Under the pieces are notes generated by a model. It made no database searches. It was not told the origin of the DNA and saw only the letters and a list, made by a program, of their open reading frames with translations. From Octopus bimaculoides (taxonomy: Eukaryota): 64,000 nt of DNA. Each line of letters starts with the position of its first letter. The stretch's first letter is position 1. The position numbers were made by a program, and so were the translations under genes. The DNA is taken from positions 47,661,873 through 47,725,872 of the forward strand of contig NC_068994.1 of the NCBI RefSeq assembly GCF_001194135.2, given 5' to 3'. Positions 29,959 to 64,000 of this stretch are shown here, one piece after another.

Positions 29959-30892
29959 ATTGCTACTTGTTTTCCCTTCATGTAAGGAATCTTTTATTAT
30001 CATTATTGGTGAACCAGCAGAATCACTAGGAGTCAATAAATTAAATACCAGTTAATGTAATCAACTAGTGCCCTCACCTCAAATTTCAGGCATTGTGCCT
30101 TTAGTAGGAAGGTTTTATTATTATTTTTTTTATCATCATCATCATCATCACCATCATCAGAAGGATGGAATAATTTATAGAGCACTGAATCAAAAAATGC
30201 CCATTCATCTACTTTCTAAGTCTAAATACCACCAAAACAAATTTTGCCTTTCATATTTCCATGGTCAACATGTAAGTACCAGTTAATTACTACGGTTCAT
30301 TTAATTATATGAGCTCTTCTCCTTTTATTTGTGACTTTATATCTATGTTAGGAATTCTTACTATTACAATTATCAGGTGATTAACGAATTTGCAGACTTG
30401 CTAGAGAGGCAAACAAAATGCATTTTGATATTTAGCTATGTTGCTTTACTTTCTGACTTCAAATCTTACTGGAACCATCTTTGCTTTTTATATTCCCTCT
30501 GTGTATGTATATATTTAGTTGAGAGTGATGTACTGAGTGACATGTGCAAATAAATTTCATTTGAAACAACTGTAAATGTCCTTCCCAGTTGGAGAAAGAC
30601 AACAAATAGAGAGCTGTAATTGCATCAACAAAGGCATCGTGTGCATATAAGCACTCTGCAACTATAATTTATTGAATACTATATTTGACAGCATAAAAGA
30701 CACACAGGTATATTAGACACAACCCAATTTCAACAATACATATTCAGAAAAATGGTTTTTGGGAACATTAAAACATAATATAGGTCAAACTTCACATAGA
30801 GGGCTCAGAATGATATTTTTGAGACTATTTTTTGAAAAAAGTACATTTTATATGCTCTTAAATATGGTAATTTCCTGAGTTATGGTCTATTT

Positions 30893-31874: not shown

Positions 31875-32070
31875 GGCAGAATTCGAACTTCCGTCAAAAT
31901 GCCTTCTGGTATTTAGTTACAGTCCTTTGAGCTTTGAGTTCAAATCTCATTGAGATCAACTTTGATCCTTCCAGAGTCAATAGAATAAGTACCAGTTGAG
32001 CACTAGGGTTGATATAATTAACTAACCCTACCCCTAAAATTGCTGGCCTTGTGCCAAAATTGAAAGAATT
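31875..32070 (+). mobile_element. SINE family B, older diverged copy
   Basis: tggcagaa...tgagttcaaatctcattgagatcaacttt...aagtaccagttgagcactagggttgat...gctggccttgtgccaaaa. Confidence 0.65.
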
Positions 32071-32297
32071 ATTATTCTTATTATTATCATTATTGTTCAG
32101 TAGTTTTATTTTTATAATGTGCTTTCACTTCACTACCGAGCGCAGCTCTGTGCACCTTGGGTATGTGCTGTGGTGCTCTTATGTTTACTGTATTGAAAGT
32201 GTTTTGCGTAGAATGTGTGCAGTACCCAGTAGTGCAATTTTCTGTATGTTATATATATTTGTAAGTCCTGGTATTTTTGTTATTATTATTATTATTA

Positions 32298-34150: not shown

Positions 34151-34257
34151 GTTATATAAAAAAATAAAAATAGAATAAAATGTGCAAAACAGTAAAAAGA
34201 AATCGTTCCCTAATTATCATTACAGCGTTTAAGATGTTGTCCTTTATGCTTTTTCAG

Positions 34258-34379
34258 ATAACGAAGAAGAAGACTCTAAAAGCTCAAAATCAAAATCTTC
34301 CATGACAGTCACAGAAGTCAAAATTCCTTCTTATGCCACATCAGCCATCATTGGCACAAACAGATCAAGTTTACAGCGA
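34258..34379 (+). CDS. TDRKH: Coding exon 2: acidic linker and start of KH1
   Basis: Acceptor ttttcag|AT; reads (D)NEEEDSKSSKSKSSMTVTEVKIPSYATSAIIGTNRSSLQR; donor CGA|gtaagc. Too short for the ORF track. Confidence 0.85.
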
Positions 34380-34639
34380 GTAAGCCTTAAAATATTTCAA
34401 TATATTTGACCGTTTTAACTGAACTTGATGCCATAAACTGACCCTAACCTAGCTTTTGACCTGACCTTGACTTTACTTGACTTGACATTAAATCTGTGGT
34501 ATTGAACAGAATATTTGCAGTAGCCCATCTTTTTATACTAAGACAAAATGTACATGATAACACTTCCAATCAGTTAAGACCAGAAGCCATGAAAGTCACT
34601 GCCTGGTATTGTGTCAGGGCATTTATTATTATTTTATTA

Positions 34640-34696
<57 letters not shown>

Positions 34697-34774
34697 GATT
34701 ACATTTTTTATATTTCATTTGATACAGGTTCATTTAAAAAGTATTTAAAAAAACTCTGGCTTCCTTTGTTTCAG

Positions 34775-34976
34775 TTACAAAATAGCTGTAATGTCCAAAT
34801 AGATCTCAAACAAGATGGTGACACATCCTCAACAGAAGATCAAACACTATGTATACGAGGAAGTTTAGAAGCAACCCAGCAGATTGAACTCAGAATCCAG
34901 CAAATCATTTCTGATATTTCAACAGTCGCTTCAGAAGACATGTATATTCCAAGTTCATCAACTATTTCACTTATTG
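34775..34976 (+). CDS. TDRKH: Coding exon 3: rest of KH1 and start of KH2
   Basis: Acceptor tttcag|TTA; reads LQNSCNVQIDLKQDGDTSSTEDQTLCIRGSLEATQQIELRIQQIISDISTVASEDMYIPSSSTISLI+G; donor G|gtaagt. Corresponds to the 3' part of ORF 34496..34993. Confidence 0.88.
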
Positions 34977-35013
34977 GTAAGTTTGTCTTTTGAGTCCAAA
35001 GACATATGTAAGT

Positions 35014-35232
35014 TATTTCTTTACTGCCCACAAGGGGCTAAACACAGAGGGGACAAACGGATTAAGTCGATTATATCGACCCCAGTGCGTAACTGGTACT
35101 CATTTAATCGACCCCGAAAGGATGAAAGGCAAAGTCGACCTCGGCGGAATTTGAACTCAGAACGTAGCGGCAGACGAAATACCGCTAAGCATTTCACCCG
35201 GCGTGCTAACGTTTCTACCAGCTCGCCGCCTT
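35014..35232 (-). mobile_element. Young SINE family B copy with TSD
   Basis: Reverse complement of aaggcggcgagctgg...ctgagttcaaattccgccgaggtcgactttgcc, CpG-rich. TSD acatatgtaagt at 35002-35013 and 35239-35250. Confidence 0.88.
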
Positions 35233-35755
35233 TCAAATACATATGTAAGTGTGTGTCTGCAAATGAATATATATATGTGTATCTATGAATGTATGTACGC
35301 ATACATATTTATGTAAATACTGTGTGCATGTATGTGTGTCTGTCTGTCTGTCATTCTGTCTGTCTCTTTAATTCTTTCAAATATTACTCTAAAGAAAAAC
35401 TTGATTTCAGTCAAAGAAACTAAGTTCTACCTTTTGAATTCAGATAACTAAACAGATTATGAGTTTCACATTACATTTTAGAGAAGTCTTGCATATTTTT
35501 CACAATTCTACTGACTAAATATCAAATTTTCATAGATGTATGCATGCATATGAATGTATGTATGCATGTATGTATGTAATGATGTATGCATGCATGTGTG
35601 TGTGTGTGTGCGTACTGGCAATATTAATTACAATGTTGTATTTAAGTATGGTAAAGTAATGCAGTTATTCTTCGTTGTAATTCTTCAGAGTCTATGTGTC
35701 ACATGAAGACACTCAATTATCATCACTTACCTTAATTAATTTTTATCTATTCCAG

Positions 35756-35895
35756 GTAACAATTATCAAACTGTACGATATATTAACCGAGTGAGTGGTG
35801 CTAAAGTTCTCATAGACACAACAGAAAATAGAGATCCAAAACACATGCAGCTTGTCTCTATAGAAGGTTCAAGAGAACAAATAGAACATGCTAAG
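35756..35895 (+). CDS. TDRKH: Coding exon 4: KH2 core
   Basis: Acceptor ttccag|GT; reads (G)NNYQTVRYINRVSGAKVLIDTTENRDPKHMQLVSIEGSREQIEHAK; donor AAG|gtaagt. SGAKV-x-I and I-x-G-x-x-E-Q-I-x-x-AK are typical type I KH features. Confidence 0.9.
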
Positions 35896-36492: not shown

Positions 36493-36535
36493 CCTCCCTC
36501 TTTCAATCCATCTCCTATCTCTCCTTTCATTTCAG

Positions 36536-36650
36536 AAACTAATTAACGACGTAGTCGACAAGAACCTCACATTCCATGAAGAACCTTTGTCACAGTGTAG
36601 TAGCAGTGACACTGCAGCGCACCTCATGCATAGAGTGGCTCACACAAAAA
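36536..36650 (+). CDS. TDRKH: Coding exon 5: KH2 last helix and linker
   Basis: Acceptor atttcag|AAA; reads KLINDVVDKNLTFHEEPLSQCSSSDTAAHLMHRVAHTK+A; donor A|gtaagt. Phases 0 and 1 bridge exons 4 and 6. Confidence 0.8.
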
Positions 36651-38262: not shown

Positions 38263-38468
38263 ATGCAGCTGCTAGAGATTCAGGAGAACATACAGTTCCA
38301 CTATCCCATTTAACCAAAGATGCTCCAACAGATCTTCTGGAACTGATGGTTGTGTCTGTGACAAGCCCTGGACATTTCTGGGCCCACATTCGTAATGAAA
38401 ATTTACCAAAATTAGTGAACCTACAGAAAAATATTGATGAATTTTACTCAGATTCAAAGCATTTTCAA
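38263..38468 (+). CDS. TDRKH: Coding exon 6: N-terminal SN-like strands and helix of extended Tudor domain
   Basis: Acceptor cttctag|AT; reads (N)AAARDSGEHTVPLSHLTKDAPTDLLELMVVSVTSPGHFWAHIRNENLPKLVNLQKNIDEFYSDSKHFQ; donor CAA|gtaagt. V-x-x-V-x-SPGHFW is the extended-Tudor hallmark. Confidence 0.9.
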
Positions 38469-38708
38469 GTAAGTTTTTGACAATTTTCATGTACCTTTCC
38501 TTTTACTGGTTTAAGTCAAAAGACTGCAGCTATGCTGGGAGACTGCCTTCCAAGAATTAGTTGATTGCATCACACCTGTTATTTAATTTATTAATCAAAG
38601 AAGGATAACAGGCAAAGTGTATCTAAGTAGAATTTTAAGTCAGAGGTGAAGAAATATAACCAAAATATTTTTTTGTCAGATGCTCTACCAATTCTGTTAT
38701 CTACTCAG

Positions 38709-38741
<33 letters not shown>

Positions 38742-39205
38742 ATATTTATTTAGATATTTACATATGTATTTATACGACACATGCATATCTTGTATTTGTG
38801 TTTGTGTATGTTGCTTAAGTTTTTTTTTATTCTCAAAAATACACAGACTTCTTAGACTGCATTAAAACAATACCAAAAAGCAATCTGGATGATTAATAAT
38901 ATTTCCTTACTAATAAACTATTAAAACAACACCTACTTCAGGGCATAACTCCAGGATTCTATCATGGTCATGAGAGGTCATGATGATCTTCTATGACCAT
39001 ACAGATCTCACATGACCACATATTGCCAAAAGTCATGTCGGTACTGAGCACCTACTAATATTGAGCTATGAAGACCTTTTTTATTTTTGTCTGAACCCTG
39101 TAGAAGCAGGATTCTGATGTTTAAAACTTACCTGTATGTGATGGTAAATAATAATTGTAGGGTTTTATGGGATTTCATAATATTTGTACTTTATCTATTT
39201 AACAG

Positions 39206-39378
39206 ACGTACCAATGTCAAGAAGTTGCTGTTGACGATATTGTGGCTGTATGCCTCTCTAACCAGTCACAATGGTACCGGGCTCGTGTCACCGCTGTGCT
39301 AAGCAATAGTTACAAAGTCTTCTGTGTTGATTATGGTTACAATGAAGAAGTGCCAAAAGACAATGTATGCCGTTTAAG
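39206..39378 (+). CDS. TDRKH: Coding exon 7: Tudor core barrel
   Basis: Acceptor ttaacag|ACG; reads TYQCQEVAVDDIVAVCLSNQSQWYRARVTAVLSNSYKVFCVDYGYNEEVPKDNVCRL+AG; donor AG|gtaagc. Contains the WYRARV and VDYG Tudor signatures. Confidence 0.92.
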
Positions 39379-39502
39379 GTAAGCCTCTCTCTCTCTCTTT
39401 CTGTCTTCCTATCTCTCTCTTCCTCTCTGTCAATCAAACTATATCCTTACCTCACTCTCTCTAGCCCTCTCTTTTTCCTCTTTATGTTTATTCACCTATA
39501 CC

Positions 39503-39504
<2 letters not shown>

Positions 39505-39533
<29 letters not shown>

Positions 39534-39570
39534 CTCTCTCTCTCTCTCTATCTCTCTATCTCTGTCTCTC

Positions 39571-39660
<90 letters not shown>
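39505..39660. repeat. Compound (GT)n(CT)n microsatellite
   Basis: Read directly from the sequence. Confidence 0.95.
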
Positions 39661-39661
<1 letters not shown>

Positions 39662-52688: not shown

Positions 52689-55600
52689 GTGCTAAATAGT
52701 GAGGGTTTTGGCAGCACCGAATCTTTAACAGACCCATTCCTAAAATCTCCCCCAACAGAAGAAACTCCCATTTCTTTACCGCCAGCTAACACAGGATGGG
52801 CTGATGACTTTCCATGGGCTTGGGCATACAATGAAGAAGAATCGGCCCCTGGAAAGGACGTTTGTGAAATGCAAACTCGCCTCAGCAATATACATTCTCC
52901 AACTGTGGAGATTCGACAGCCTGGGGCAGGAGACATTACCTCTCTTCAAGAAACAAATGCACTTACAAAGAAAACTTCCGAAACTTCAGATTTGGCAGAG
53001 CACAGTGAAGACAAAGATGGCAACACTGCTTCCAAAGCTGAGGAAGTAAGCAATGGTTTTTTTTATAATGGTATTTGCAGTGATGTAGATGCAGGACTGG
53101 TCAAAGCTACCAGTGACTTAAATGTTGATCATGTGACTAACAACGATTCTCTCGTAGAATCTCCTTCAGCGAATGAAAACTCAAAACTAAAGTATTTAGA
53201 TCGTAGAGAAGAAATATGCCCTAGCAGTGATTATGACACATCAGAGATGTTTGATTCAGGCCTCATGTCAGGTGATCTTAGTATTTCTACCCCCATATCA
53301 GAAACTTCGCATGAGTTTGACCATGAAAGTTTAGATCAATCCGATTTAGAATATGTTGCTCATAGCCAGTCTGATGTAACTAGAGTAGAAAAACCTGAAA
53401 GTGGCAGTGGTGGGGCTTTAGATTTAGGAGTAACTCAAGTCTCTGAAGACAATTACAGTACTGACATCTGTGAAAGTTCTATAACTGTCTCAAGAGATGA
53501 CGTATCTTCAGGCTTAGATTCCCTACAAGGAGACCAGATAAGGTTTAGTCAAGAAATGTCTAGTCTAGTTATAAAGGATGGTTCTCTTTTGGACCAAGCT
53601 ACATTACAAGCCACTAACACAAAAGAGTCTGATCCTTTATCCTTTCAAGAATCTTCAGTTAGCCCAATTTTAAAACAACCCCTAAAAATACAAAGTTTAG
53701 ATGGAGAAGAAACTGAAGATTATGAATTAGAACATACAGGTGAAAAACTGAATTCGCTAGGAGCTAAAGATGTTGTTTCTAGAAGAGACACAAACGTACA
53801 AAAATATGAGGAACTGAAAAGTTCTGAGAAGCTAATACCTGTTGAAGCTGATACCAACATTAGCCTACTCGACTCTGACAGAACACAAAAAACTACCCAA
53901 GAAATTGTCACAAGTGGAGAGGCTGCAGAAGCTTCTTTACAATCTACAGGTAAGCCAGAAGAGACCAAAACTTCAGACACTGTAGATGCCCAATTTAGCA
54001 GGTCTGATTTGGTCACTAATGTTTCCTCTCATACAGAAACATCTAGAGATGAGAGTGAATTAAACAACTTTGAATATATTTCAGTTGATCAAAAAACTGA
54101 TATGAAAATGACTGACACCACTAGTTCCATCTTAGTAAATCAGTCAGATAATATTCCTCAGTGGACTAATTTGGAGGACAAAACTTACCAAGTGTCCTCT
54201 AATCTTGATGACACTCAAACCCTACAACCACACCAATATATTACTGAAATATTATATGATATATGTCCTGTAACTAAAATGACATCAATAAGCAAGGACA
54301 TTATGACAAGCAAAGCTGGTTTAACCCAGCCAGAGACAAAAACATCATCAGAACCAGAAAATAATAGGCTTCCATCACACTCAGAGGAAGTTACTTTGAA
54401 TGTTTCAACTGGATTTGATGGGAGATCTAGTCCCATTGACCAAACTGTACAACCACATTCAGATTCTGTAACTTCAAATTTAGATACAGAATATAATGAG
54501 GTTTGGACAAAGTTTTATTCTCCGCTTGAGGAGGATAATGACTGGAATGAAAAGCCATGTCTTACTCTGAAAGAACCAAGTAAAGACAATAATGACACCA
54601 TGACATACTTACTGAAAGACGATTCTACACAATCTGAACCTTTGGAAAATGAAATAGAGCAAGAAGACATTTGGAAAATGTTTTACAATCCAATATCCAA
54701 CAAGGATTGGGAAGAGAAAGCTTTGAAAATAACCAGAGACAATGAAATTTGGAGGAAATTTTATGAAACAGATGAGAATACAGATGATTATAAATCACTG
54801 ATTGACAGAAATCAATATAGCACTGATTGGAAATACACTGTGTCTGAACCACTTGAAGAAGATCGAAAAGATCATTATATATGGTCAAGATTTTATTCAT
54901 CAGAAGATAGTTTCAAAGGTGTTGGAGACACGAAAACATCTGAAAGAAGAAAAGATCCTCAGGTTACAAAAGTTGAAAGTGACAGCCAGATAGGTGATAA
55001 GATCACTTCAGGAGTTGTCGAGTGCTCATCTCAAGGAACACAAGAACTGCTTGGCATTCATCACAGTGAAGTAAACAACATCACAACACAGGTGTTAATG
55101 GATGGAGATGATTCCCAAGACCCTGAAAGTTCTGGGAAAACAGTTCATTCTGTAGATAGAGAAATAAATACTAACAAATCTCATGAAATTTTCAAGAATG
55201 AAAATGTTTTAGATCCTTCTAAAAATGGAAACAAAGATGCAGTTACAGATGAGAAAAATCTTGAATATTCAGCTCTTGAAGAGGATAATGACTGTGAAGA
55301 GAAAGATCCGTCCAAACTACAAGTAGTTGAATATCATCAATTACCAGTGCAGACGTTCTTAGAATCTTGGAAAGACACTGCATCAGATCCTCTTGAAGAT
55401 GCTGATATTCTAACTAGAAATGCCGAAATACCAAACTATGACACCATTGACGATGGGAAAAACATAAATACTGTGATATATTCAAACATTCCAGACATTA
55501 GTACTCCCACTTCTGAAAATGTTATCAGGGAAGTAGGTGTTTCTAAGGTGATGTCTGTGCAAATTGACAACTTGGAATATTCAGCTCTTGAAGAGGATAA

Positions 55601-58600
55601 TGACTGGGACGAAAAAGGCCCCACATTATTTCAGGTAAAGCATCCAGATGAAAAACCTGTGGAGACTTTCTTGGAATCTTGGACAGACACTGTGTCAGAT
55701 CCTCTCGAAGATGCTGATATTCTGAGCACTGAAGACCACACACCTGATGACGGAAAAACCAAAGACCAAAATGTTAGTACAAAAAGTATTGATGTGAAGA
55801 AATTGGAATCAATATCTACATCAGAGAATATTGTCCACGAGAGTGTTGGTGATGATGTGACATCTGTCAGAATTGAACCATCAGATTACAACTTGGAATA
55901 TTCAGCTCTTGAAGAGGATAATGACTGGAAGGAGAAAGATCCCACTTTGGTTCAGGTAAGAACAAAAGTGGAAGAACCTGCAAAGACTTTCTTAGAATCT
56001 TGGAAAGACACTGTGTCAGATCCTCTTGAAGATGCTGATATTCTGNNNNNNNNNNNNNNNNNNNNNNNNNNNNNNNNNNNNNNNNNNNNNNNNNNNNNNN
56101 NNNNNNNNNNNNNNNNNNNNNNNNNNNNNNNNNNNNNNNNNNNNNNNNNNNNNNNNNNNNNNNNNNNNNNNNNNNNNNNNNNNNNNNNNNNNNNNNNNNN
56201 NNNNNNNNNNNNNNNNNNNNNNNNNNNNNNNNNNNNNNNNNNNNNNNNNNNNNNNNNNNNNNNNNNNNNNNNNNNNNNNNNNNNNNNNNNNNNNNNNNNN
56301 NNNNNNNNNNNNNNNNNNNNNNNNNNNNNNNNNNNNNNNNNNNNNNNNNNNNNNNNNNNNNNNNNNNNNNNNNNNNNNNNNNNNNNNNNNNNNNNNNNNN
56401 NNNNNNNNNNNNNNNNNNNNNNNNNNNNNNNNNNNNNNNNNNNNNNNNNNNNNNNNNNNNNNNNNNNNNNNNNNNNNNNNNNNNNNNNNNNNNNNNNNNN
56501 NNNNNNNNNNNNNNNNNNNNNNNNNNNNNNNNNNNNNNNNNNNNNNNNNNNNNNNNNNNNNNNNNNNNNNNNNNNNNNNNNNNNNNNNNNNNNNNNNNNN
56601 NNNNNNNNNNNNNNNNNNNNNNNNNNNNNNNNNNNNNNNNNNNNNNNNNNNNNNNNNNNNNNNNNNNNNNNNNNNNNNNNNNNNNNNNNNNNNNNNNNNN
56701 NNNNNNNNNNNNNNNNNNNNNNNNNNNNNNNNNNNNNNNNNNNNNNNNNNNNNNNNNNNNNNNNNNNNNNNCAGACACTGTGTCAGATCCTCTCGAAGAT
56801 GCTGATATTCTGAGCACTGAAGACCACACACCTGATGACGGAAAAACCAAAGACCAAAATGTTAGTACAAAAAGTATTGATGTGAAGAAATTGGAATCAA
56901 TATCTACATCAGAGAATATTGTCCACGAGAGTGTTGGTGTTGATGTGACATCAGTCACAATTGAACCATCAGATGACAACTTGGAATATTCAGCTCTTGA
57001 AGAGGATAATGACTGGAAGGAGAAAGATCCCACTTTGGTTCAGGTAAGAACAAAAGTGGAAGAACCTGCAAAGACTTTCTTAGAATCTTGGAAAGACACT
57101 GTGTCAGATCCTCTTGAAGATGCTGATATTCTGAGCACTGAAGACCAAACACCTTATGATGTAAAACCCAAAGACCAAAATATTGACACAAAAGGTATTG
57201 ACGTGAAGAAATTGGAATCAATATCTACATCAGAGAATATTGTCCACAAGAGTGTTGGTGAGGATGTGACATCAGTCACAATTGAACCATCAGATTACAA
57301 CTTGGAATATTCTGCTCTTGAAGAGGATAATGACTGGAAGGAGAAAGATCCCACTTTGGTTCAGGTAAGAACAAAAGTGGAAGAACCTGCAAAGACTTTC
57401 TTAGAATCTTGGAAAGACACTGTGTCAGATCCTCTTGAAGATGCTGATATTCTTAGTTCTGAAGACCAAATATCTGGTGATGTAAAACCCAAAGACCAAG
57501 ATGCAGATTTACCATCTGCATCTCACCACAAAGATGTCACAGATTCTTCTGAAGAGAAGACAACCCATGAGGAAACAGATGTTTGGTCAATGTTTTATAC
57601 ACCTATGACACCTAGAGAAGATGACAATAACTTGAAATATTCAGTTCTTGAAGAGGATAATGATTGGGAAGAGAAAGATGCCACTTTAGTTCAGGTAACA
57701 AGTGAAGTAGAAGAACCTATACAGACATTCCTGGAATCTTGGAAAGATACTGCATCAGATCCTCTTGAAGACGCTGATATTCTCAGTACTGAAGACCAAA
57801 TACCTGATGATGGAAAACCCAAAGACCAAGGTCTTGATACAAAAAATATTGCTACAAATAAATTGGAATGTATATCTACATCTGAGAGTATTGTCCGAGA
57901 GANNNNNNNNNNNNNNNNNNNNNNNNNNNNNNNNNNNNNNNNNNNNNNNNNNNNNNNNNNNNNNNNNNNNNNNNNNNNNNNNNNNNNNNNNNNNNNNNNN
58001 NNNNNNNNNNNNNNNNNNNNNNNNNNNNNNNNNNNNNNNNNNNNNNNNNNNNNNNNNNNNNNNNNNNNNNNNNNNNNNNNNNNNNNNNNNNNNNNNNNNN
58101 NNNNNNNNNNNNNNNNNNNNNNNNNNNNNNNNNNNNNNNNNNNNNNNNNNNNNNNNNNNNNNNNNNNNNNNNNNNNNNNNNNNNNNNNNNNNNNNNNNNN
58201 NNNNNNNNNNNNNNNNNNNNNNNNNNNNNNNNNNNNNNNNNNNNNNNNNNNNNNNNNNNNNNNNNNNNNNNNNNNNNNNNNNNNNNNNNNNNNNNNNNNN
58301 NNCTGCATCAGATCCTCTCGAAGATGCTGATATTCTGAGCACTGAAGAACAAATACCTGATGATGTAAAAACCAAGCAGCAAAATATTGACACAAAAGGT
58401 ATTGATGTGAAGAAATTGGAATCAATATTTATGTCTGAGAATATTGTCCACGAGAGTGTTGGTGATGATGTGACATCTGTCAGAATTGAACCATCAGATG
58501 ACAACTTGGAATATTCAGCTCTTGAAGAGGATAATGACTGGAAGGAGAAAGATCCCACTTTAGTTCAGGTAAGACCAAAAGTGGAAGAACCTGCAAAGAC

Positions 58601-61600
58601 TTTCTTAGAATCTTGGAAAGACACTGTGTCAGATCCTCTCGAAGATGCTGATATTCTAAGTACTGATGATTCTGACAATTTTATGCAATCTAGACATGCA
58701 GAGGTTGTTGCTAAATCTTCAACTTTTCCTATTAAGAGAAATTGGGATTCCGATGACAACATTTATGTGTCTGTTGATGACATTGAAAATGAACTTGGTA
58801 TAACAGAAGTAACTAGAAAATTACCATCTATATCTCACCACAAAATTGTCACAGAATCTTCTGACATATTGTTAGGTTCTTCTAATTCTGGTGGGAAACA
58901 TCAAGCACCTTCTCGAGATATTGAAGAAAATAGGAAAGAGAGTAATTCTGAAAAGGGAGAGATATCTGATGACAAAACATCTGCTGAAAATAACATCAGT
59001 GGTAGACATTTTGATCTTTCTCTCCTGTCAGACTCAATGCTTCAAGACAAAACATTAATATCTCAGAATATTTCTTTTACAGATGAATACAGTATTGATA
59101 GACGTGAGTCTTTTCTAATACCTGATACCAATTTCCGCACAATTGAACGAAGTTCCAAAAGTATTTCCGAAGATTTTATGAAGCCTCATGGATTCTTCCA
59201 GTCAGATACCACAAGTGAATCCAAAAGCATTGATCATATTGATGATTCACCTTCCAAACCTGAAGGTTCTTTGATTAAAGACACTGATATCAAGAAAATG
59301 ACATGTGACACCATCCAATTGGATGAAGAACCTTCAGGAAAAGCAGATGAAATAAAAACTTTGGAAGAAGAGTCTGATGAGAAAGGTGACGATTATGATG
59401 ATCAAGATGATGATGATATATGGTTGACTATGCTTTCTACTTCTCCAGAAAATGGTGAGATGGAAGAGTATGACAAGAATGAGGAAGTGATGTCTGATAA
59501 TGACGACTCATCTACTGACAAAGAAACTAGCAGTCATTATGAATATCAAGATTCAAATGCAATAGATACACAAACTAGTGTCTTTGAGAAAACATCTGTA
59601 CATCAGACAACTGAAGATGGGAAACTATTCTCAGAGAAAGAAATTGTTGAAAGAGAACATCAGGATTTATGTCACAAACAGACAACGGAAGACAGTGAAT
59701 ATTCAGATAAGGAAGATGCCGAATTTGTTGATGCAGAAGAGGAGCTTAAAATGGAGTTTGTTGATGCAGAGGATGGTAGTGAAACAGAAGAAAATACTTC
59801 ATACACTAAAGTGGATTATTCAGCTCTTGAAGAGGATAATGGCTTGAAAGAGAAAGACCCAACTTTAGCTCAGGAAAGACCAGAAGATGAAGAGCCTGCG
59901 GAAACTTCCTTACAATCTTGTGAAGATATAGTGTCAGGTCATCTTAAAGATGTTGATATTCTAAGAACTGAAGATCATCAAATATCTGGTGATTTAAATA
60001 CCAAGGGACAAGATTTTGAAACAAAGGCTTTTGGTAGATTGACTTCTGAAAATGTAGGCAGAGAGAGATTTGATGATCATGATGTGACATCAGTGAAAAT
60101 TGAACCATCAGATGACAACTTGGAATATTCGGCTCTTGAAGAGGATAATGATTGGGAAGAGAAAGATCCCACTTTAGTCCAGGTAAGAACAAAAGTGGAA
60201 GAACCTGTGCAGACTTTCTTAGAATCTTGGAAAGATACTGCATCAGATCCTCTCGAAGATGCTGATATTCTGAGTACTGAAGAACAAATACCTGATGATG
60301 TAAAAACCAAGCAGCAAAATATTGACACAAAAGGTATTGATGTGAAGAAATTGGAATCAATATTTATGTCTGAGAATATTGTCCATGAGAGTGTTGGTGA
60401 TGATGTGACAACATTCAGAATTGAACCATCAGATGACAACTTGGAATATTCAGCTCTTGAAGAGGATAATGACTGGAAGGAGAAAGATCCCACTTTAGTT
60501 CAGGTAAGACCAAAAGTGGAAGAACCTGCAAAGACTTTCTTAGAATCTTGGAAAGACACTGTGTCAGATCCTCTCGAAGATGCTGATATTCTCAGTATTG
60601 ATGATTCTGACAACAATGTGATACACTCAAGACATACAGAAGTTGTTGCTAAATCTTCAACTGTTTCTTGTACAAAACAATGGGATTCCGATGACAACAT
60701 CTATGTGTCTGTTAATGACATTGAAAAGGAACTTGGTATACCAGACAAAACTAGGGATTTACCATCTGCATCTCACTACAAAGATGTCACAGATTCTTCT
60801 GAAGAGAAGGCAACCCATGATGAAACAGATGTTTGGTCAATGTTTTATACACCTATGACACCTAGAGAAGATGACAATAACTTGGAATATTCAGCTCTTG
60901 AAGAGGATAATGATTGGGAAGAGAAAGATGCCACTTTAGTTCAGGTAACAAGTGAAGTAGAAGAACCTATACAGACATTCCTGGAATCTTGGAAAGATAC
61001 TGCATCAGATCCTCTTGAAGACGCTGATATTCTCAGTACTGAAGACCAAATACCTGATGATGGAAAACCCAAAGACCAAGGTCTTGATACCAAAAACATT
61101 ACTACAAAGAAATTGGAATGTATATCTACCTCTGAGAGTATTGTCCGAGAGAGTGTTGGTGATGATGTGACATCACTCAGAATTGAACCATCAGATTACA
61201 ACTTGGAATATTCAGCTCTTGAAGAGGATAATGACTGGAAGGAGAAAGATCCCACTTTAGTTCAGGTAAGAACAAAAGTGGAAGAACCTGCAAAGACTTT
61301 CTTGGAATCTTGGAAAGATACTGTGTCAGATCCTCTCGAAGATGCTGATATTCTGAGCACTGAAGACCAAACACCTGATGATGTAAAACCTAAAGACCAA
61401 AATGTTGACACTAAAGTTATTGCTACAAAGAAATTGGAATGTTTATCTACATCTGAGAGTATTGTCCGAGAGAGTGTTGGTGATGATGTGACATCTGTCA
61501 GAATTGAACCATCAGATTACAACTTGGAATATTCAGCTCTTGAAGAGGATAATGACTGGAAGGNNNNNNNNNNNNNNNNNNNNNNNNNNNNNNNNNNNNN

Positions 61601-64000
61601 NNNNNNNNNNNNNNNNNNNNNNNNNNNNNNNNNNNNNNNNNNNNNNNNNNNNNNNNNNNNNNNNNNNNNNNNNNNNNNNNNNNNNNNNNNNNNNNNNNNN
61701 NNNNNNNNNNNNNNNNNNNNNNNNNNNNNNNNNNNNNNNNNNNNNNNNNNNNNNNNNNNNNNNNNNNNNNNNNNNNNNNNNNNNNNNNNNNNNNNNNNNN
61801 NNNNNNNNNNNNNNNNNNNNNNNNNNNNNNNNNNNNNNNNNNNNNNNNNNNNNNNNNNNNNNNNNNNNNNNNNNNNNNNNNNNNNNNNNNNNNNNNNNNN
61901 NNNNNNNNNNNNNNNNNNNNNNNNNNNNNNNNNNNNNNNNNNNNNNNNNNNNNNNNNNNNNNNNNNNNNNNNNNNNNNNNNNNNNNNNNNNNNNNNNNNN
62001 NNNNNNNNNNNNNNNNNNNNNNNNCTCAGAATTGAACCATCAGATTACAACTTGGAATATTCAGCTCTTGAAGAGGATAATGACAAGGAAGAGAAAGATC
62101 TCACTTTAGTCCAGGTAAGAACAAAAGTGGAAGAGCCTGTGCAGACATTTTTGGAATCTGGGAAAGATACTGCATCAGATCCTCTTGAAGATGCTGATAT
62201 ACTCAGTACTGAAGACCAAATACCTGATGATGGAAAACCCAAAGACCAAGGTCTTGATACAAAAAATATTGCTACAAATAAATTGGAATGTATATCTACC
62301 TCTGAGAATATTGTCCACGAGAGTGTTGGTGATGATGTAACATCAGTCAGAATTGAACCATCAGATGACAACTTGGAATATTCAGCTCTTGAAGAGGATA
62401 ATGACTGGAAGGAGAAAGATCCCACTTTAGTTCAGGTAAGACCAAAAGTGGAAGAACCTGCAAAGACTTTCTTAGAATCTTGGAAAGATACAGTGTCAGA
62501 TCCTCTCGAAGATGCTGATATTCTGAGCACTGAAGACCACACACCTGATGACGGAAAAACCAAAGACCAAAATGTTGACACTAAAGTTATTGCTACAAAG
62601 AAATTGGAATGTTTATCTACATCTGAGAGTATTGTCCGAGAGAGTGTTGGTGATGATGTGACATCAGTCAGAATTGAACCATCAGATTACAACTTGGAAT
62701 ATTCAGCTCTTGAAGAGGATAATGACAAGGAAGAGAAAGATCTCACTTTAGTCCAGGTAAGAACAAAAGTGGAAGAGCCTGTGCAGACATTTTTGGAATC
62801 TGGGAAAGACGCTGTGTCAGATCCTCTCGAAGATGCTGATATTCTAAGAACTGATGATTCTGACAATGTGATACAATCTAGAGACATAGAAGTCATCCCA
62901 ATGTCCTCAACTGTTCCATGTAATGATAAATGCGACATTGGTGATGACATCTATGTGTCTGTTGATGACATTGAAAATGAACTTGGTATAATTGAAGGTA
63001 CTATGGATTTACCATCTGCATCTCACCATAATGAGGCAACAGATTCATCTGAAGCAAAGACAACTAGTGATGAAAATGATGTTTGGTCAATGTTTTATAC
63101 ACCTGTGACACCTGGTGAAGAAGATGACAACTTGGAATATTCAGCTCTTGACGCGGATAATGATTGGGAAGAGAAAGATCCCACTCTTGTTCAGGTAAGA
63201 ACAAAAGTGGAAGAACCTGCAAAGACTTTCTTAGAATCTTGGCAAGATAATGTGTCTGATCCTCTCGAAGATGCTGATATTCTCAGTACTGAAGAACAAA
63301 TATTTGATGATATAAAACCTAAAGACCAAAATGTTGATACTAAAAACATTGCTACAAAGAAAGTGGAATGTATATCTACTTCTGAGAATATTGTCCAAGT
63401 GAGTGTTGGTGATGATGTGACAACATTCAGAATTGAACCATCAGATGACAACTTGCAATATTCAGCTCTTGAAGAGGATAATGATTGGGAAGAGAAAGAT
63501 CCCACTTTAGTTCAGGTAAGAACAAAAGTGGAAGAACCTGCAAAGACTTTCTTGGAATCTTGGCAAGATACTGTGTCTGATCCTCTCGAAGATGCTGATA
63601 TTCTAAGTACTGAAGACCAAATATCTGGTGATGTGGAAACCAAAGAGTTTTCTACATCTGGAGGAAAAGAACATCGCATGAAACATTTAGCTCTTGAAGA
63701 GGTTAGTGACTGTGAAGATAATGTACCTATGGACTCTTCAGTAGAACATCATGAAATACTTGAATATGATTCAATTAGTGATAGTGAAAATGAAGAGAAT
63801 TATTCACCACCTTTACAATTTTCAGCTGACAACGACTGCCATTTAACCCAACTGAACCATGGTTTTGCGGGAAAAAAATCTTTAGTTACAAAAGCTGTAA
63901 ATACTGATGATAATGAAGTTTGGAATATGTATTTTACTTCCCATCAAAAAGACAGTGAATATGCAGAAATAGAGAAGTATCCACTGGAAGATGTGGAAAG
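52689..64000 (+). CDS. TDRKH: Giant coding exon 11 (at least 11.3 kb including gaps): acidic Ser/Thr/Asp/Glu-rich, probably disordered tail with tandem 107-aa repeats
   Basis: Acceptor ttttctaatatttgtaccatttctttacag|GTG, phase 0, 1015 nt after the exon 10 donor. Open in segments 52689-56045, 56772-57902, 58303-61563 and 62025-64000. The frame changes only across N-gaps, and the frame is still open at the window end (YAEIEKYPLEDVE). Confidence 0.8.
56046..56771. other. Assembly gap (726 N) inside repeat array
   Basis: Run of N flanked on both sides by DTVSDPLEDADIL repeat sequence. Confidence 0.99.
57903..58302. other. Assembly gap (400 N) inside repeat array
   Basis: Run of N flanked by repeat units. 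Confidence 0.99.
61564..62024. other. Assembly gap (461 N) inside repeat array
   Basis: Run of N flanked by repeat units. Confidence 0.99.

What the first reader, a model, noticed from the sequence alone, without database searches (positions are those of the whole stretch)
55260..63620. 107-aa tandem repeat with an invariant core under apparent coding constraint and higher-order structure
Seen: at least 18 units. The first about 52 aa (LEYSALEEDNDWKEKDPTLVQVRTKVEEPAKTFLESWKDTVSDPLEDADIL) are nearly invariant while the second half drifts. Differences in the core are often synonymous: the last Leu of DADIL is ctg, cta, ctt or ctc in different copies, and Ser in YSAL is tca, tct or tcg. All indels are multiples of 3. 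Long 438-441-bp variants carrying the DDxIYVSV[DN]DIE[NK]ELGI...DVWSMFYTP insert recur 2250 bp apart (60828 and 63078), which implies block duplication. Inference: a selected, multivalent binding module rather than neutral satellite DNA.
Basis: partly seen in the sequence, partly recalled or inferred. Interest (0 to 1): 0.75.

Follow-up and report, generated by a model that had tools for sequence, protein, structure and literature searches.

The report
Repeat array in octopus TDRKH giant exon
The 107-amino-acid tandem repeat is real protein-coding sequence: a disordered, acidic array of conserved short motifs inside a giant exon of the octopus version of TDRKH/PAPI (a mitochondrial piRNA-pathway scaffold), conserved in other cephalopods, with an unknown binding partner.

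Summary
The repeat is real and coding. Each of the four sequenced blocks between the N gaps has exactly one stop-free frame, and all four encode the same unit. The window holds 17 complete cores plus partial units at gap edges.

The array lies in a giant exon (52689 to beyond 64000). Two independent gene models splice this exon to Tudor exons of a TDRKH/PAPI-like gene (membrane anchor, two KH domains, extended Tudor) whose exons lie upstream in the window.

The gap-free Octopus sinensis locus has about 27 units. A distant cephalopod-like ortholog (35% identity) keeps the same core motifs with unrelated, shorter linkers.

dN/dS is 0.22-0.30 in the core and 0.5-0.8 in the linker, in three separate comparisons.

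The "invariant core" is really two motif blocks, unit residues 1-12 and 32-51. AlphaFold gives no fold (pLDDT 58-62), so this is a disordered array of short motifs, not a domain.

All three gaps break inside units, so copy number, frame continuity and the 2250-bp spacing cannot be read from this assembly.

Binding itself, the partner and transcription are untested. FFAT-type (VAP-binding) motifs in the variant units and the spacer are a lead.

The parts
20133..20225 (+). Exon 1 of the TDRKH/PAPI-like gene: start Met and hydrophobic N-terminal membrane anchor (MFDITTTGKLALFVALPTTFVLLYLLLRH)
   Evidence: tblastn of O. sinensis LOC118765947 (P0001), 97% identity
29427..29519 (+). Exon 2 (basic linker after the anchor)
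34251..35895 (+). Three exons (34251-34382, 34766-34978, 35743-35895) encoding the two KH domains
   Evidence: Pfam KH_1 has 2 stretches on the Argonauta ortholog P0004.
36533..36646 (+). Exon after KH2. It is the terminal coding exon in the O. sinensis 257-aa model.
38295..41398 (+). Four exons (about 38295-38471, 39203-39379, 40413-40478, about 41243-41398) encoding the extended Tudor domain
   Evidence: tblastn of P0002 and P0004. Pfam TUDOR 3.3e-25. The best solved-structure matches are human TDRKH, fly Papi and silkworm PAPI.
47839..47892 (+). Small linking exon VTWCNLWLRAYTKRAAAK, with canonical AG acceptor and GT donor, phase 0
   Evidence: It is joined directly to the giant exon in P0002.
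52689..64000 (+). Giant exon, open to the window end. The acceptor is tttctttacag|GTG at 52688/52689, phase 0. It continues about 2,800 codons further in O. sinensis.
54504..54902 (+). Single-copy proto-units upstream of the array: EVWTKFYSPLEEDNDW...SEPLENE, DIWKMFYNP, EIWRKFYETDE, DWKYTVSEPLEED...IWSRFYSS
   Evidence: A weak unit-HMM hit at 54516-54650 (E 3.8e-7), motif listing, and the same proto-unit in P0003 at aa 686
55260..58673 (+). Sub-array 1. Units start at 55260, 55572, 55893 (cut by gap), 56774 (partial), 56981, 57302 (short variant with DVWSMFYTP), 57632 (cut by gap), 58305 (partial) and 58506. N gaps lie at 56046-56771 and 57903-58302.
58674..59810 (+). Non-repeat, in-frame spacer between the sub-arrays. 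It begins with a long-variant segment and is very acidic (28% D+E over 58860-59810). It is conserved in the O. sinensis genome but is not matched in the gene model P0002.
   Evidence: (dN/dS 0.39)
59721..59768 (+). Two near-canonical FFAT-type cores, EFVDAEE (59721-59735 is the match to the EFVDA part) and EFVDAED (59754-59768), in acidic flanks
   Evidence: Conserved in L002 at 32325 and 32358, and as LEFVDAVEE in P0003.
59811..63686 (+). Sub-array 2. Units start at 59811 (degenerate), 60120, 60441 (long, 147 aa), 60882, 61203, 61524 (cut by gap), 62052, 62373, 62694 (long, 146 aa), 63132 and 63453 (last, truncated). An N gap lies at 61564-62024.
63687..64000 (+). Start of the non-repeat C-terminal part of the exon
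   Evidence: 96% aa identity to P0002 residues 3461-3563

Best explanation
The array is part of a giant coding exon at the C-terminal side of the cephalopod ortholog of TDRKH/PAPI. That protein has an N-terminal membrane anchor, two KH domains and an extended Tudor domain. From established knowledge of the family, it sits on the mitochondrial outer membrane and scaffolds piRNA 3'-end maturation.

The repeat region is an intrinsically disordered, strongly acidic tail (net charge about -15 per unit). Each unit carries two short conserved motif blocks:
- Block A: x-x-Y-S-x-L-E-E-D-x-x-W.
- Block B: T-F-x-E-x-W-K-[DE]-T-x-S-D-P-L-E-[DE].

Some units also carry a third motif, [DE]-x-W-x-x-F-Y-[ST]-P. 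Poorly constrained linkers separate the blocks.

The most likely mechanism is a multivalent docking array. About 20-30 copies of the same short linear motifs would hang from an organelle-anchored scaffold. They would bind many copies of one partner, or cluster it into a condensate such as nuage or intermitochondrial cement, by avidity.

Shown: the sequence is coding, it sits in this gene context, the motif blocks are under purifying selection, the blocks are deeply conserved, and no autonomous fold is predicted.

Inferred: that the blocks are binding sites, that multivalency is the point, and the subcellular location. The partner is unknown.
For: Coding:
- There is one stop-free frame per sequenced block, against 17-165 stops in the other frames.
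- The non-repeat stretches of 857 and about 380 codons in the same exon are also open.

Gene context:
- The acceptor at 52688/52689 is in phase with the upstream exon donor.
- The O. sinensis 6301-aa model P0002 joins Tudor to this exon.
- Argonauta hians GAB1604296.1 (P0004) joins anchor-KH-KH-Tudor to the first 120 residues of the exon.
- Pfam finds KH_1 twice and TUDOR. The best PDB matches are TDRKH/Papi/PAPI.

Selection:
- Window paralogs: core dN/dS 0.22, linker 0.58.
- Minimal-change counts: core 0.26 (p = 2e-5), with 0.88 and 1.60 in the two wrong frames.
- O. sinensis paralogs: core 0.30 (p = 2e-7), linker 0.80.
- Orthologous blocks of the two species: core 0.26, linker 0.52 (Fisher p = 0.02).

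Deep conservation:
- Y3, S4, L6, E7, W12, E14, F33, W37, T40, S42, L45 and E46 are kept in P0003/L003 (35% identity). Its units are 77-79 aa with unalignable linkers.

Disorder:
- AF2 on the unit gives pLDDT 57.7 and pTM 0.12.
- With a three-species alignment it gives pLDDT 62.4, pTM 0.13 and no secondary structure elements.
- Composition is 26% D+E with GRAVY -0.9.

No known domain:
- Pfam gives no credible match (only weak repeat-summed hits, rejected), and PDB by sequence and by profile gives none.
- Only 3 related proteins turned up among 1.84 billion representatives.
Against: - No binding, partner, expression or localisation data were available. The gene models are predictions, and I could not see the RNA evidence behind them.
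- In O. sinensis the KH part and the Tudor-plus-giant-exon part are annotated as two genes, so the full-length anchor-to-array protein is not proven in any Octopus.
- The O. sinensis assembly has two 1-nt deletions inside linker segments that shift the frame. I read them as homopolymer errors, because 759 and 4947 codons stay open after them. That reading is an inference.
- Paralog dN/dS is affected by gene conversion and by non-independence of the copies.
- AF2 on shallow alignments can miss small folds or folding on binding.
Confidence: 0.55

Rival explanations
1. Sticker-and-spacer tail with no dedicated partner. The acidic disordered tail would act as an entropic brush or spacer on the organelle surface, or drive phase separation through its aromatic residues. 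Conservation would reflect only the pattern of aromatic 'stickers' and the charge.
For: - Extreme acidity and predicted disorder.
- The most conserved residues include four aromatics.
- Linker length and sequence are free to change between lineages.
- Copy number differs between species, and O. sinensis has homogenised its interior units: 96% identity within the species against 90% between species.
Against: - Non-aromatic residues (S4, L6, E7, E14, T40, S42, L45, E46) and the exact spacing within each block are also kept at 35% overall identity. That is more than a composition or sticker model needs.
- The core dN/dS of 0.26 is half that of the equally acidic linker.
Confidence: 0.2
2. ER tether. 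The motifs that matter are FFAT-type motifs that bind the MSP domain of VAP-family ER proteins. These are the two EFVDAE[ED] cores in the spacer and the [DE]xW..FY[ST]P motif of the variant units, which resembles a Phospho-FFAT like that of STARD3. The giant tail would then link the anchored organelle or nuage to the ER, with the canonical units as spacers or regulators.
For: - EFVDAEE and EFVDAED match 6 of 7 positions of the conventional core EFFDAxE (PMC8306308). They sit in acidic flanks.
- They are conserved in O. sinensis and in the distant ortholog.
- The F-Y-S/T-P motif matches positions 2-5 of the STARD3 Phospho-FFAT (F207, Y208, pS209, P210; PMC7705450).
- It recurs 7 times in the window, 8 times in P0002 and 9 times in P0003, with acidic residues upstream.
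Against: - This is a resemblance only. The published scoring matrix was not held, so no FFAT score was computed.
- FFAT-like strings are common in acidic sequence.
- The idea does not explain blocks A and B, which are the most conserved and most numerous elements.
- LEYSALEE itself is a poor FFAT: E at position 2, A at position 4, L at position 5.
- No paper in the library links TDRKH and FFAT.
Confidence: 0.15
3. A small folded repeat domain, a new globular or folding-upon-binding module of about 50 residues, repeated like beads on a string.
For: - The conserved core has a fixed length (50-51 aa) in both lineages.
- AF2 places a short helix on F33-K38 in one run. pLDDT rises to about 75 around Y3-W12.
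Against: - pTM is 0.12-0.13 and mean pLDDT is at most 62 in both runs.
- No secondary-structure elements appear with the deeper alignment.
- Hydrophobic content is low, at GRAVY -0.87.
- Residues 13-31 in the middle of the 'domain' are as variable as the linker.
Confidence: 0.07
4. Non-functional sequence: a neutral satellite, a decaying pseudo-exon or an assembly artefact.
For: - There are three assembly gaps inside the array, with contig ends in repeat sequence.
- There are two frame shifts in the O. sinensis assembly.
- No expression data were seen.
Against: - The array exists at the syntenic place in an independent gap-free assembly. It also exists in a third, distant genome fragment.
- There are no stops in more than 3,200 sequenced codons.
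- dN/dS is well below 1 only in the real frame.
- The frames stay open for 759 and 4947 codons after each O. sinensis shift, and both shifts are 1-nt losses in short A runs.
Confidence: 0.03

Closest known systems
TDRKH / PAPI (Tudor and KH domain-containing protein; human TDRKH, Drosophila Papi, Bombyx BmPAPI)
   Same: The host gene has the family architecture: an N-terminal hydrophobic anchor, two KH domains and one extended Tudor domain. The best solved-structure matches of the Tudor region are exactly these proteins (6PI7, 5J39, 5YGB, 5VQG).
   Different: Described family members end shortly after the Tudor domain (my knowledge). Here a giant exon adds more than 6,000 residues in O. sinensis, including the 20-30-unit array. 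None of that extension has detectable relatives outside three cephalopod-type sequences.
GW182/TNRC6-type tryptophan-motif arrays (Argonaute- and CCR4-NOT-binding W motifs in disordered regions)
   Same: It works like these in outline: many Trp-centred short motifs in a long disordered region give multivalent binding. The small-RNA-pathway context is also shared.
   Different: There is no homology. The Trp residues here are flanked by D/N/S and K/E, never by Gly (NDWKEK, ESWKDT). The module is a longer composite that also has invariant Tyr, Phe, Ser and Leu. Binding to PIWI/Argonaute is untested.
FFAT and Phospho-FFAT motifs (VAP/MOSPD2 MSP-domain ligands, e.g. ORP1, STARD3)
   Same: EFVDAEE/EFVDAED in acidic flanks, and F-Y-S/T-P preceded by acidic residues. 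They lie in a tail that looks disordered and cytosolic, and they are conserved across species.
   Different: Position 3 is Val rather than Phe. No PWM score or binding test was done. The main repeated blocks A and B are not FFAT-like.
Giant-exon tandem repeats in scaffold proteins (e.g. giant ankyrins, from my knowledge)
   Same: A single very large exon adds a long disordered, internally repetitive segment to an otherwise conserved scaffold gene.
   Different: The gene family, repeat sequence and lineage are unrelated. Tissue specificity is unknown here.

Membership tests
TDRKH/PAPI family (host gene) | N-terminal hydrophobic membrane anchor | tested here: met
   The window exon 20133-20225 encodes MFDITTTGKLALFVALPTTFVLLYLLLRH, and P0004 has the same. 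Membrane insertion itself was not tested.
TDRKH/PAPI family (host gene) | Two KH domains followed by one extended Tudor domain | tested here: met
   Pfam gives KH_1 with 2 stretches (1.5e-17) and TUDOR (3.3e-25) on P0004. The corresponding exons map in the window.
TDRKH/PAPI family (host gene) | Tudor domain closest to TDRKH/Papi rather than to other Tudor proteins | tested here: met
   The top PDB hits are human TDRKH (5e-22), fly Papi and silkworm PAPI. TDRD1 is weaker, at 1e-12. No reciprocal search against AKAP1 was possible.
TDRKH/PAPI family (host gene) | Aromatic cage for symmetric dimethyl-arginine; PIWI and trimmer recruitment | not tested
   Cage residues were not aligned. The function is not testable with these tools.
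TDRKH/PAPI family (host gene) | The array and the KH/Tudor exons are on one transcript | tested here: inconclusive
   P0002 joins Tudor to the exon, and P0004 joins anchor-KH-KH-Tudor to the exon's start. Splice phases fit. However, O. sinensis annotates KH separately, and no cDNA was seen.
Known protein repeat or domain families (Pfam, PDB) | Significant profile match of a single unit | tested here: not met
   Only summed weak hits were found: Alpha_adaptin_C at 25.1 bits over many units but 12.6 bits (E = 0.15) on one unit, and LRRNT_2 at 20.9 bits. The best PDB match is the REV1 C-terminal domain at E = 0.03.
FFAT / Phospho-FFAT motif | Seven-residue core EFFDAxE (or S/T at position 4) with aromatic at position 2 and an acidic upstream flank | tested here: inconclusive
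   EFVDAEE/EFVDAED match 6 of 7 positions, with 4 acidic residues in the 8 upstream. FY[ST]P matches positions 2-5 of the STARD3 type. The published matrix was not held, so there is no score.
FFAT / Phospho-FFAT motif | Conserved across species, in an unstructured cytosolic region | tested here: met
   The motifs are conserved in L002 and P0003. Disorder was predicted for the units; it was not predicted for the spacer, and topology is inferred.
FFAT / Phospho-FFAT motif | Binding to a VAP-family MSP domain | not testable with these tools
   This needs peptide binding assays.
GW182-type Argonaute hook | Trp adjacent to Gly (GW/WG) in a disordered region | tested here: not met
   The contexts are NDW[KE]EK and ESWKDT in octopus, and DEWEEG and ENWKET in P0003. 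No GW or WG occurs at the conserved Trp positions.
LC3-interacting region (LIR) | [W/F/Y]-x-x-[L/I/V] with acidic or phosphorylatable neighbours | tested here: inconclusive
   Y3-S-A-L6, followed by EED and preceded by D/E, fits the loose pattern and is conserved. The pattern is of low specificity (my knowledge), and binding is untestable here.
Kinesin-light-chain W-acidic motif | [L/M]-x-W-[D/E] in an acidic context (from my knowledge) | tested here: not met
   The residue at -2 is N or D, never L or M. The residue at +1 is K as often as E in octopus.

The most novel reading that the evidence does not exclude
Cephalopods have turned the mitochondrial piRNA scaffold TDRKH/PAPI into a protein of over 6,000 residues. 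Its tail carries a lineage-specific, previously undescribed docking module (YSxLEEDxxW ... TFxExWKxTxSDPLE) in 20-30 copies, together with conserved FFAT-type motifs. The protein would be a giant organelle tether and condensate organiser that recruits many copies of a specific partner (a PIWI-pathway factor or an ER MSP-domain protein) to the mitochondrial surface.
Probability: 0.2. Interest if true: 0.7.

Novelty: new variant of a known kind. Interest (0 to 1): 0.5.

Why it matters
TDRKH/PAPI is a conserved core factor of piRNA maturation. A version carrying a giant repeat-bearing tail has not been described: the paper library holds nothing on cephalopod TDRKH, and its single octopus+TDRKH paper is unrelated.

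The core motifs are kept across deep cephalopod divergence while everything around them changes. That marks them as a defined, synthesisable peptide bait for finding a partner.

If the partner belongs to the piRNA pathway or to ER contact sites, this would show how a lineage rebuilt the architecture of nuage or of organelle contacts by amplifying a short motif.

On the practical side, the locus is a trap for annotation. The gene is split in one species. Units are skipped around probable 1-nt assembly errors. Summed weak repeat hits reach Pfam cut-offs.

Tried and rejected
- Word-indexed homolog searches found little. With 54300-56045 there were no hits. With the KH/Tudor exons only the O. sinensis KH protein came up. 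With the Tudor/giant-exon junction only Argonauta P0004 came up. No transcript-derived proteins were found, so there is no expression evidence.
- Alpha_adaptin_C (25.1 bits against a 25.4 cut-off) and LRRNT_2 (20.9 against 20.7) on multi-unit pieces are rejected. On single units the Alpha_adaptin_C score falls to 12.6-13.2 bits, E = 0.1-0.15, so the earlier values are sums of weak repeat matches.
- The REV1 C-terminal domain hit (E = 0.03) is not significant.
- Pfam on the 2,828-residue region after the array in O. sinensis found nothing.
- Fold search was not run. Both AF2 models are low-confidence, and matches would be meaningless.
Exons were mapped by tblastn instead.
- The FFAT scoring matrix (Table EV4 of PMC7705450) is not held.
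- Known motif classes checked by eye and not met: GW/WG hooks, KLC W-acidic, PP2A-B56 LxxIxE, PP1 RVxF, clathrin box, a conserved SIM.

Full report
**What the window is**

The window is eukaryotic: 13 N gaps, GC about 0.3 and microsatellites. It is syntenic with Octopus sinensis chromosome CM016872.1. Identity is 82-96% in most long alignments, introns included. It therefore comes from an octopus closely related to, but not the same as, O. sinensis.

**The gaps, tested first**

The finding spans three N gaps: 56046-56771, 57903-58302 and 61564-62024. Each of the four sequenced blocks has exactly one stop-free frame, against 17-165 stops in the other two frames. In each block that frame encodes the same repeat.

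In window coordinates the frames run 3, 2, 3, 3. This means nothing, because the N lengths (726, 400, 461) are estimates.

All six gap edges lie inside units. At gaps 1 and 3 the two contig ends share 41 nt (39 matching) and 53 nt (identical) of the conserved core; the gap 2 ends do not overlap. These are the usual short-read breaks at repeats. Continuity, frame across gaps, unit order across gaps and copy number cannot be read from this assembly.

In the gap-free O. sinensis locus (L002, no N) the corresponding intervals differ in length:
- Between the orthologs of blocks A and C: about 2857 bp, against 2262 bp in the window, of which 1126 are N.
- Between the orthologs of blocks C and D: about 2187 bp, against 1452 bp in the window, of which 461 are N.

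**The observation**

TRF finds 321-bp arrays with scores 1118-1348. A unit HMM finds 17 complete 51-aa cores plus partial units at gap edges, and weak single-copy proto-units upstream at 54072-54650.

Units are mostly 107 aa. Variants are 104, 110, 146 and 147 aa long. The array is really two sub-arrays, 55260-58673 and 59811-63686, separated by about 1.1 kb of in-frame non-repeat sequence.

The "invariant 52 aa" resolves into two blocks. Residues 1-12 have mean pairwise identity 0.92-0.94 and residues 32-51 have 0.93. Residues 13-31 (0.73) vary like the linker (0.78).

The 2250-bp recurrence spans gap 3, so it is not a measurement. A five-unit block similarity exists, at 83% over 1603 bp. It is weaker than many unit-to-unit matches (88-94%). 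Each of the two long variants also has its own ortholog in O. sinensis, so the duplication predates the species split.

**Coding constraint**

Four lines of evidence bear on this.

(i) Window paralogs, same eight canonical units, Nei-Gojobori:
- Core: dS 0.35, dN 0.079, ratio 0.22.
- Linker: dS 0.22, dN 0.126, ratio 0.58.
- The core has more synonymous and less non-synonymous divergence than the linker. Gene conversion alone cannot explain the conservation.

(ii) Minimal-change counts per codon column:
- Core: 21 synonymous and 21 non-synonymous changes, where neutrality expects about 1:4. The ratio is 0.26, p = 2.4e-5.
- The same DNA read in the two wrong frames gives 0.88 and 1.60.

(iii) An independent replicate in O. 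sinensis paralogs: core 0.30 (p = 1.8e-7), linker 0.80 (p = 0.29).

(iv) Orthologous blocks between the two species:
- Core 0.26 (p = 1e-7).
- Linker and variant parts 0.52.
- N-terminal non-repeat part 0.46.
- Spacer 0.39.
- Core against linker, Fisher p = 0.02.

The whole exon evolves like a constrained disordered protein, and the core is the most constrained part.

**Gene context**

On the + strand upstream lie exons for an N-terminal hydrophobic anchor (20133-20225), two KH domains (34251-35895) and an extended Tudor domain (38295-41398).

The giant exon starts at a canonical acceptor (tttctttacag|GTG, 52688/52689). It is in phase 0 with the donor of the small exon 47839-47892.

In O. sinensis a 6301-aa model (P0002) joins Tudor, that small exon and the giant exon. 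In Argonauta hians, GAB1604296.1 (P0004, 626 aa) joins anchor-KH-KH-Tudor to the first 120 residues of the giant exon.

Pfam confirms KH_1 twice and TUDOR. The best solved-structure matches are human TDRKH, Drosophila Papi and Bombyx PAPI. The host gene is therefore a TDRKH/PAPI ortholog with an enormous C-terminal extension.

One caveat applies. O. sinensis annotates the KH part as a separate 257-aa gene, and I saw no cDNA.

**The O. sinensis array**

L002 has about 27 units between 27284 and 37058, with the same spacer between two sub-arrays.

The frame changes twice, at about 28504 and about 30714-30720. Each change is the loss of one A from a short A run in a linker, making that unit 320 rather than 321 nt. 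After each change the frame stays open, for 759 and then 4947 codons. I read both as assembly errors. The gene model evidently skips around them: six genome-encoded unit segments are absent from P0002.

Edge units are one-to-one orthologs of the window's edge units. Interior units of sub-array 1 are homogenised within O. sinensis, at 96% identity within the species against 90% between species. The array therefore shows concerted evolution or recent expansion, while the core peptide stays the same.

**Deep conservation**

The exhaustive search of 1.84 billion representatives returned only three proteins: P0002, P0004 and P0003.

P0003 (2849 aa) comes from an ENA metagenome contig with cephalopod-like GC. 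It is 35-40% identical to the window in the non-repeat N-terminal part. It starts at the homologous exon boundary and carries at least 20 units of 77-79 aa, arranged as alternating pairs.

Its linkers are unalignable to octopus linkers. The core aligns without trouble. Y3, S4, L6, E7, W12, E14, F33, W37, T40, S42, L45 and E46 are conserved in all three species.

A third motif, [DE]xW..FY[ST]P, follows the core directly in half of the P0003 units. In octopus it occurs in the variant units and in the single-copy proto-units (EVWTKFYSPLEEDNDW). There it abuts block A, which suggests that LEYSALEEDNDW derives from FYSPLEEDNDW.

**Structure**

AF2 on one unit with 18 window units gives pLDDT 57.7 and pTM 0.12, with only two tiny helices (F33-K38, P44-D47). 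With a 39-row three-species alignment it gives pLDDT 62.4 and pTM 0.13, with no secondary-structure elements.

The unit has 26% D+E, net charge -15 and GRAVY -0.88. No Pfam or PDB family matches credibly.

This is a disordered array of short linear motifs, not a folded repeat.

**Mechanism**

Best supported is a multivalent docking array on an organelle-anchored piRNA scaffold. Shown steps are coding, gene context, selection, deep conservation of the motif blocks, and disorder. Inferred steps are binding, the role of multivalency, and location. The partner is unknown.

A concrete lead concerns FFAT-type motifs. The spacer holds two near-canonical cores, EFVDAEE at 59721 and EFVDAED at 59754. 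They are conserved in both other species.

The FY[ST]P motif matches positions 2-5 of the STARD3 Phospho-FFAT (PMC7705450; definitions in PMC8306308). This would make the tail a VAP-binding tether. It does not explain blocks A and B, and it could not be scored.

**Novelty**

The library holds no paper on cephalopods and TDRKH or on TDRKH and FFAT, and the single octopus+TDRKH paper is unrelated. The host family and the general principle (amplified short motifs in a disordered scaffold tail) are known. The module, its scale and its host are not. I rate it a new variant of a known kind, of moderate interest.

Noticed in passing
window 59721-59735 and 59754-59768; L002 32325 and 32358; P0003 aa 2503: Two near-canonical FFAT-type cores (EFVDAEE, EFVDAED) in acidic flanks lie in the spacer between the two sub-arrays. 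They are conserved in O. sinensis and, as LEFVDAVEE, in the distant ortholog. This is a possible VAP/MSP-domain binding site on a mitochondrially anchored protein.
   Followed up: partly
window 54504, 54672, 54750, 54882, 57584, 60834, 63084: A recurrent [DE]xW..FY[ST]P motif (KFYETDE at 54750) resembles the F-Y-pS-P core of the STARD3 Phospho-FFAT. In the proto-unit at 54504 it abuts LEEDNDW, which suggests that block A of the canonical unit derives from it.
   Followed up: partly
L002 ~28504 and ~30714-30720 (O. sinensis CM016872.1): Two single-A deletions in short A runs shift the frame inside linker segments of the array. The frames stay open long afterwards, so these are probably long-read assembly errors. 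The NCBI model P0002 appears to skip around them and lacks six genome-encoded unit segments, with no match to most of the spacer.
   Followed up: partly
window 20133-41398; L001/L002 gene calls: In O. sinensis the anchor-plus-KH part (LOC118765947, 257 aa) and the Tudor-plus-giant-exon part (6301 aa) are annotated as two adjacent genes. The Argonauta hians model joins them. This is either a split annotation or genuine alternative isoforms.
   Followed up: partly
L003 18481-19980: After the stop that ends P0003, the same repeat continues in another frame to the end of the contig. The distant ortholog's array is therefore longer than the called protein, through either a frameshift or an assembly error.
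   Followed up: no
window 58305-61562 and 62025-63998 (Pfam scans): Summed weak matches over many units bring LRRNT_2 just above its curated cut-off (20.9 against 20.7 bits) and Alpha_adaptin_C just below its own (25.1 against 25.4). The same faint LRRNT_2 label is attached to the O. sinensis protein. This is an annotation artefact of repeats.
   Followed up: yes
window 26404-26640, 31895-32073, 35059-35239, 45946-46120 and others: A dispersed element of about 170-240 bp recurs in both orientations in the introns of this gene. It matches several places in the O. sinensis locus at 70-85% identity and is probably an interspersed (SINE-like) repeat.
   Followed up: no
window 51569-51685: A stretch similar to an exon used in the Argonauta model (NINEELVKTGHAEW...) lies between the linking exon and the giant exon. 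The O. sinensis model does not use it, so it may be an alternative exon.
   Followed up: no
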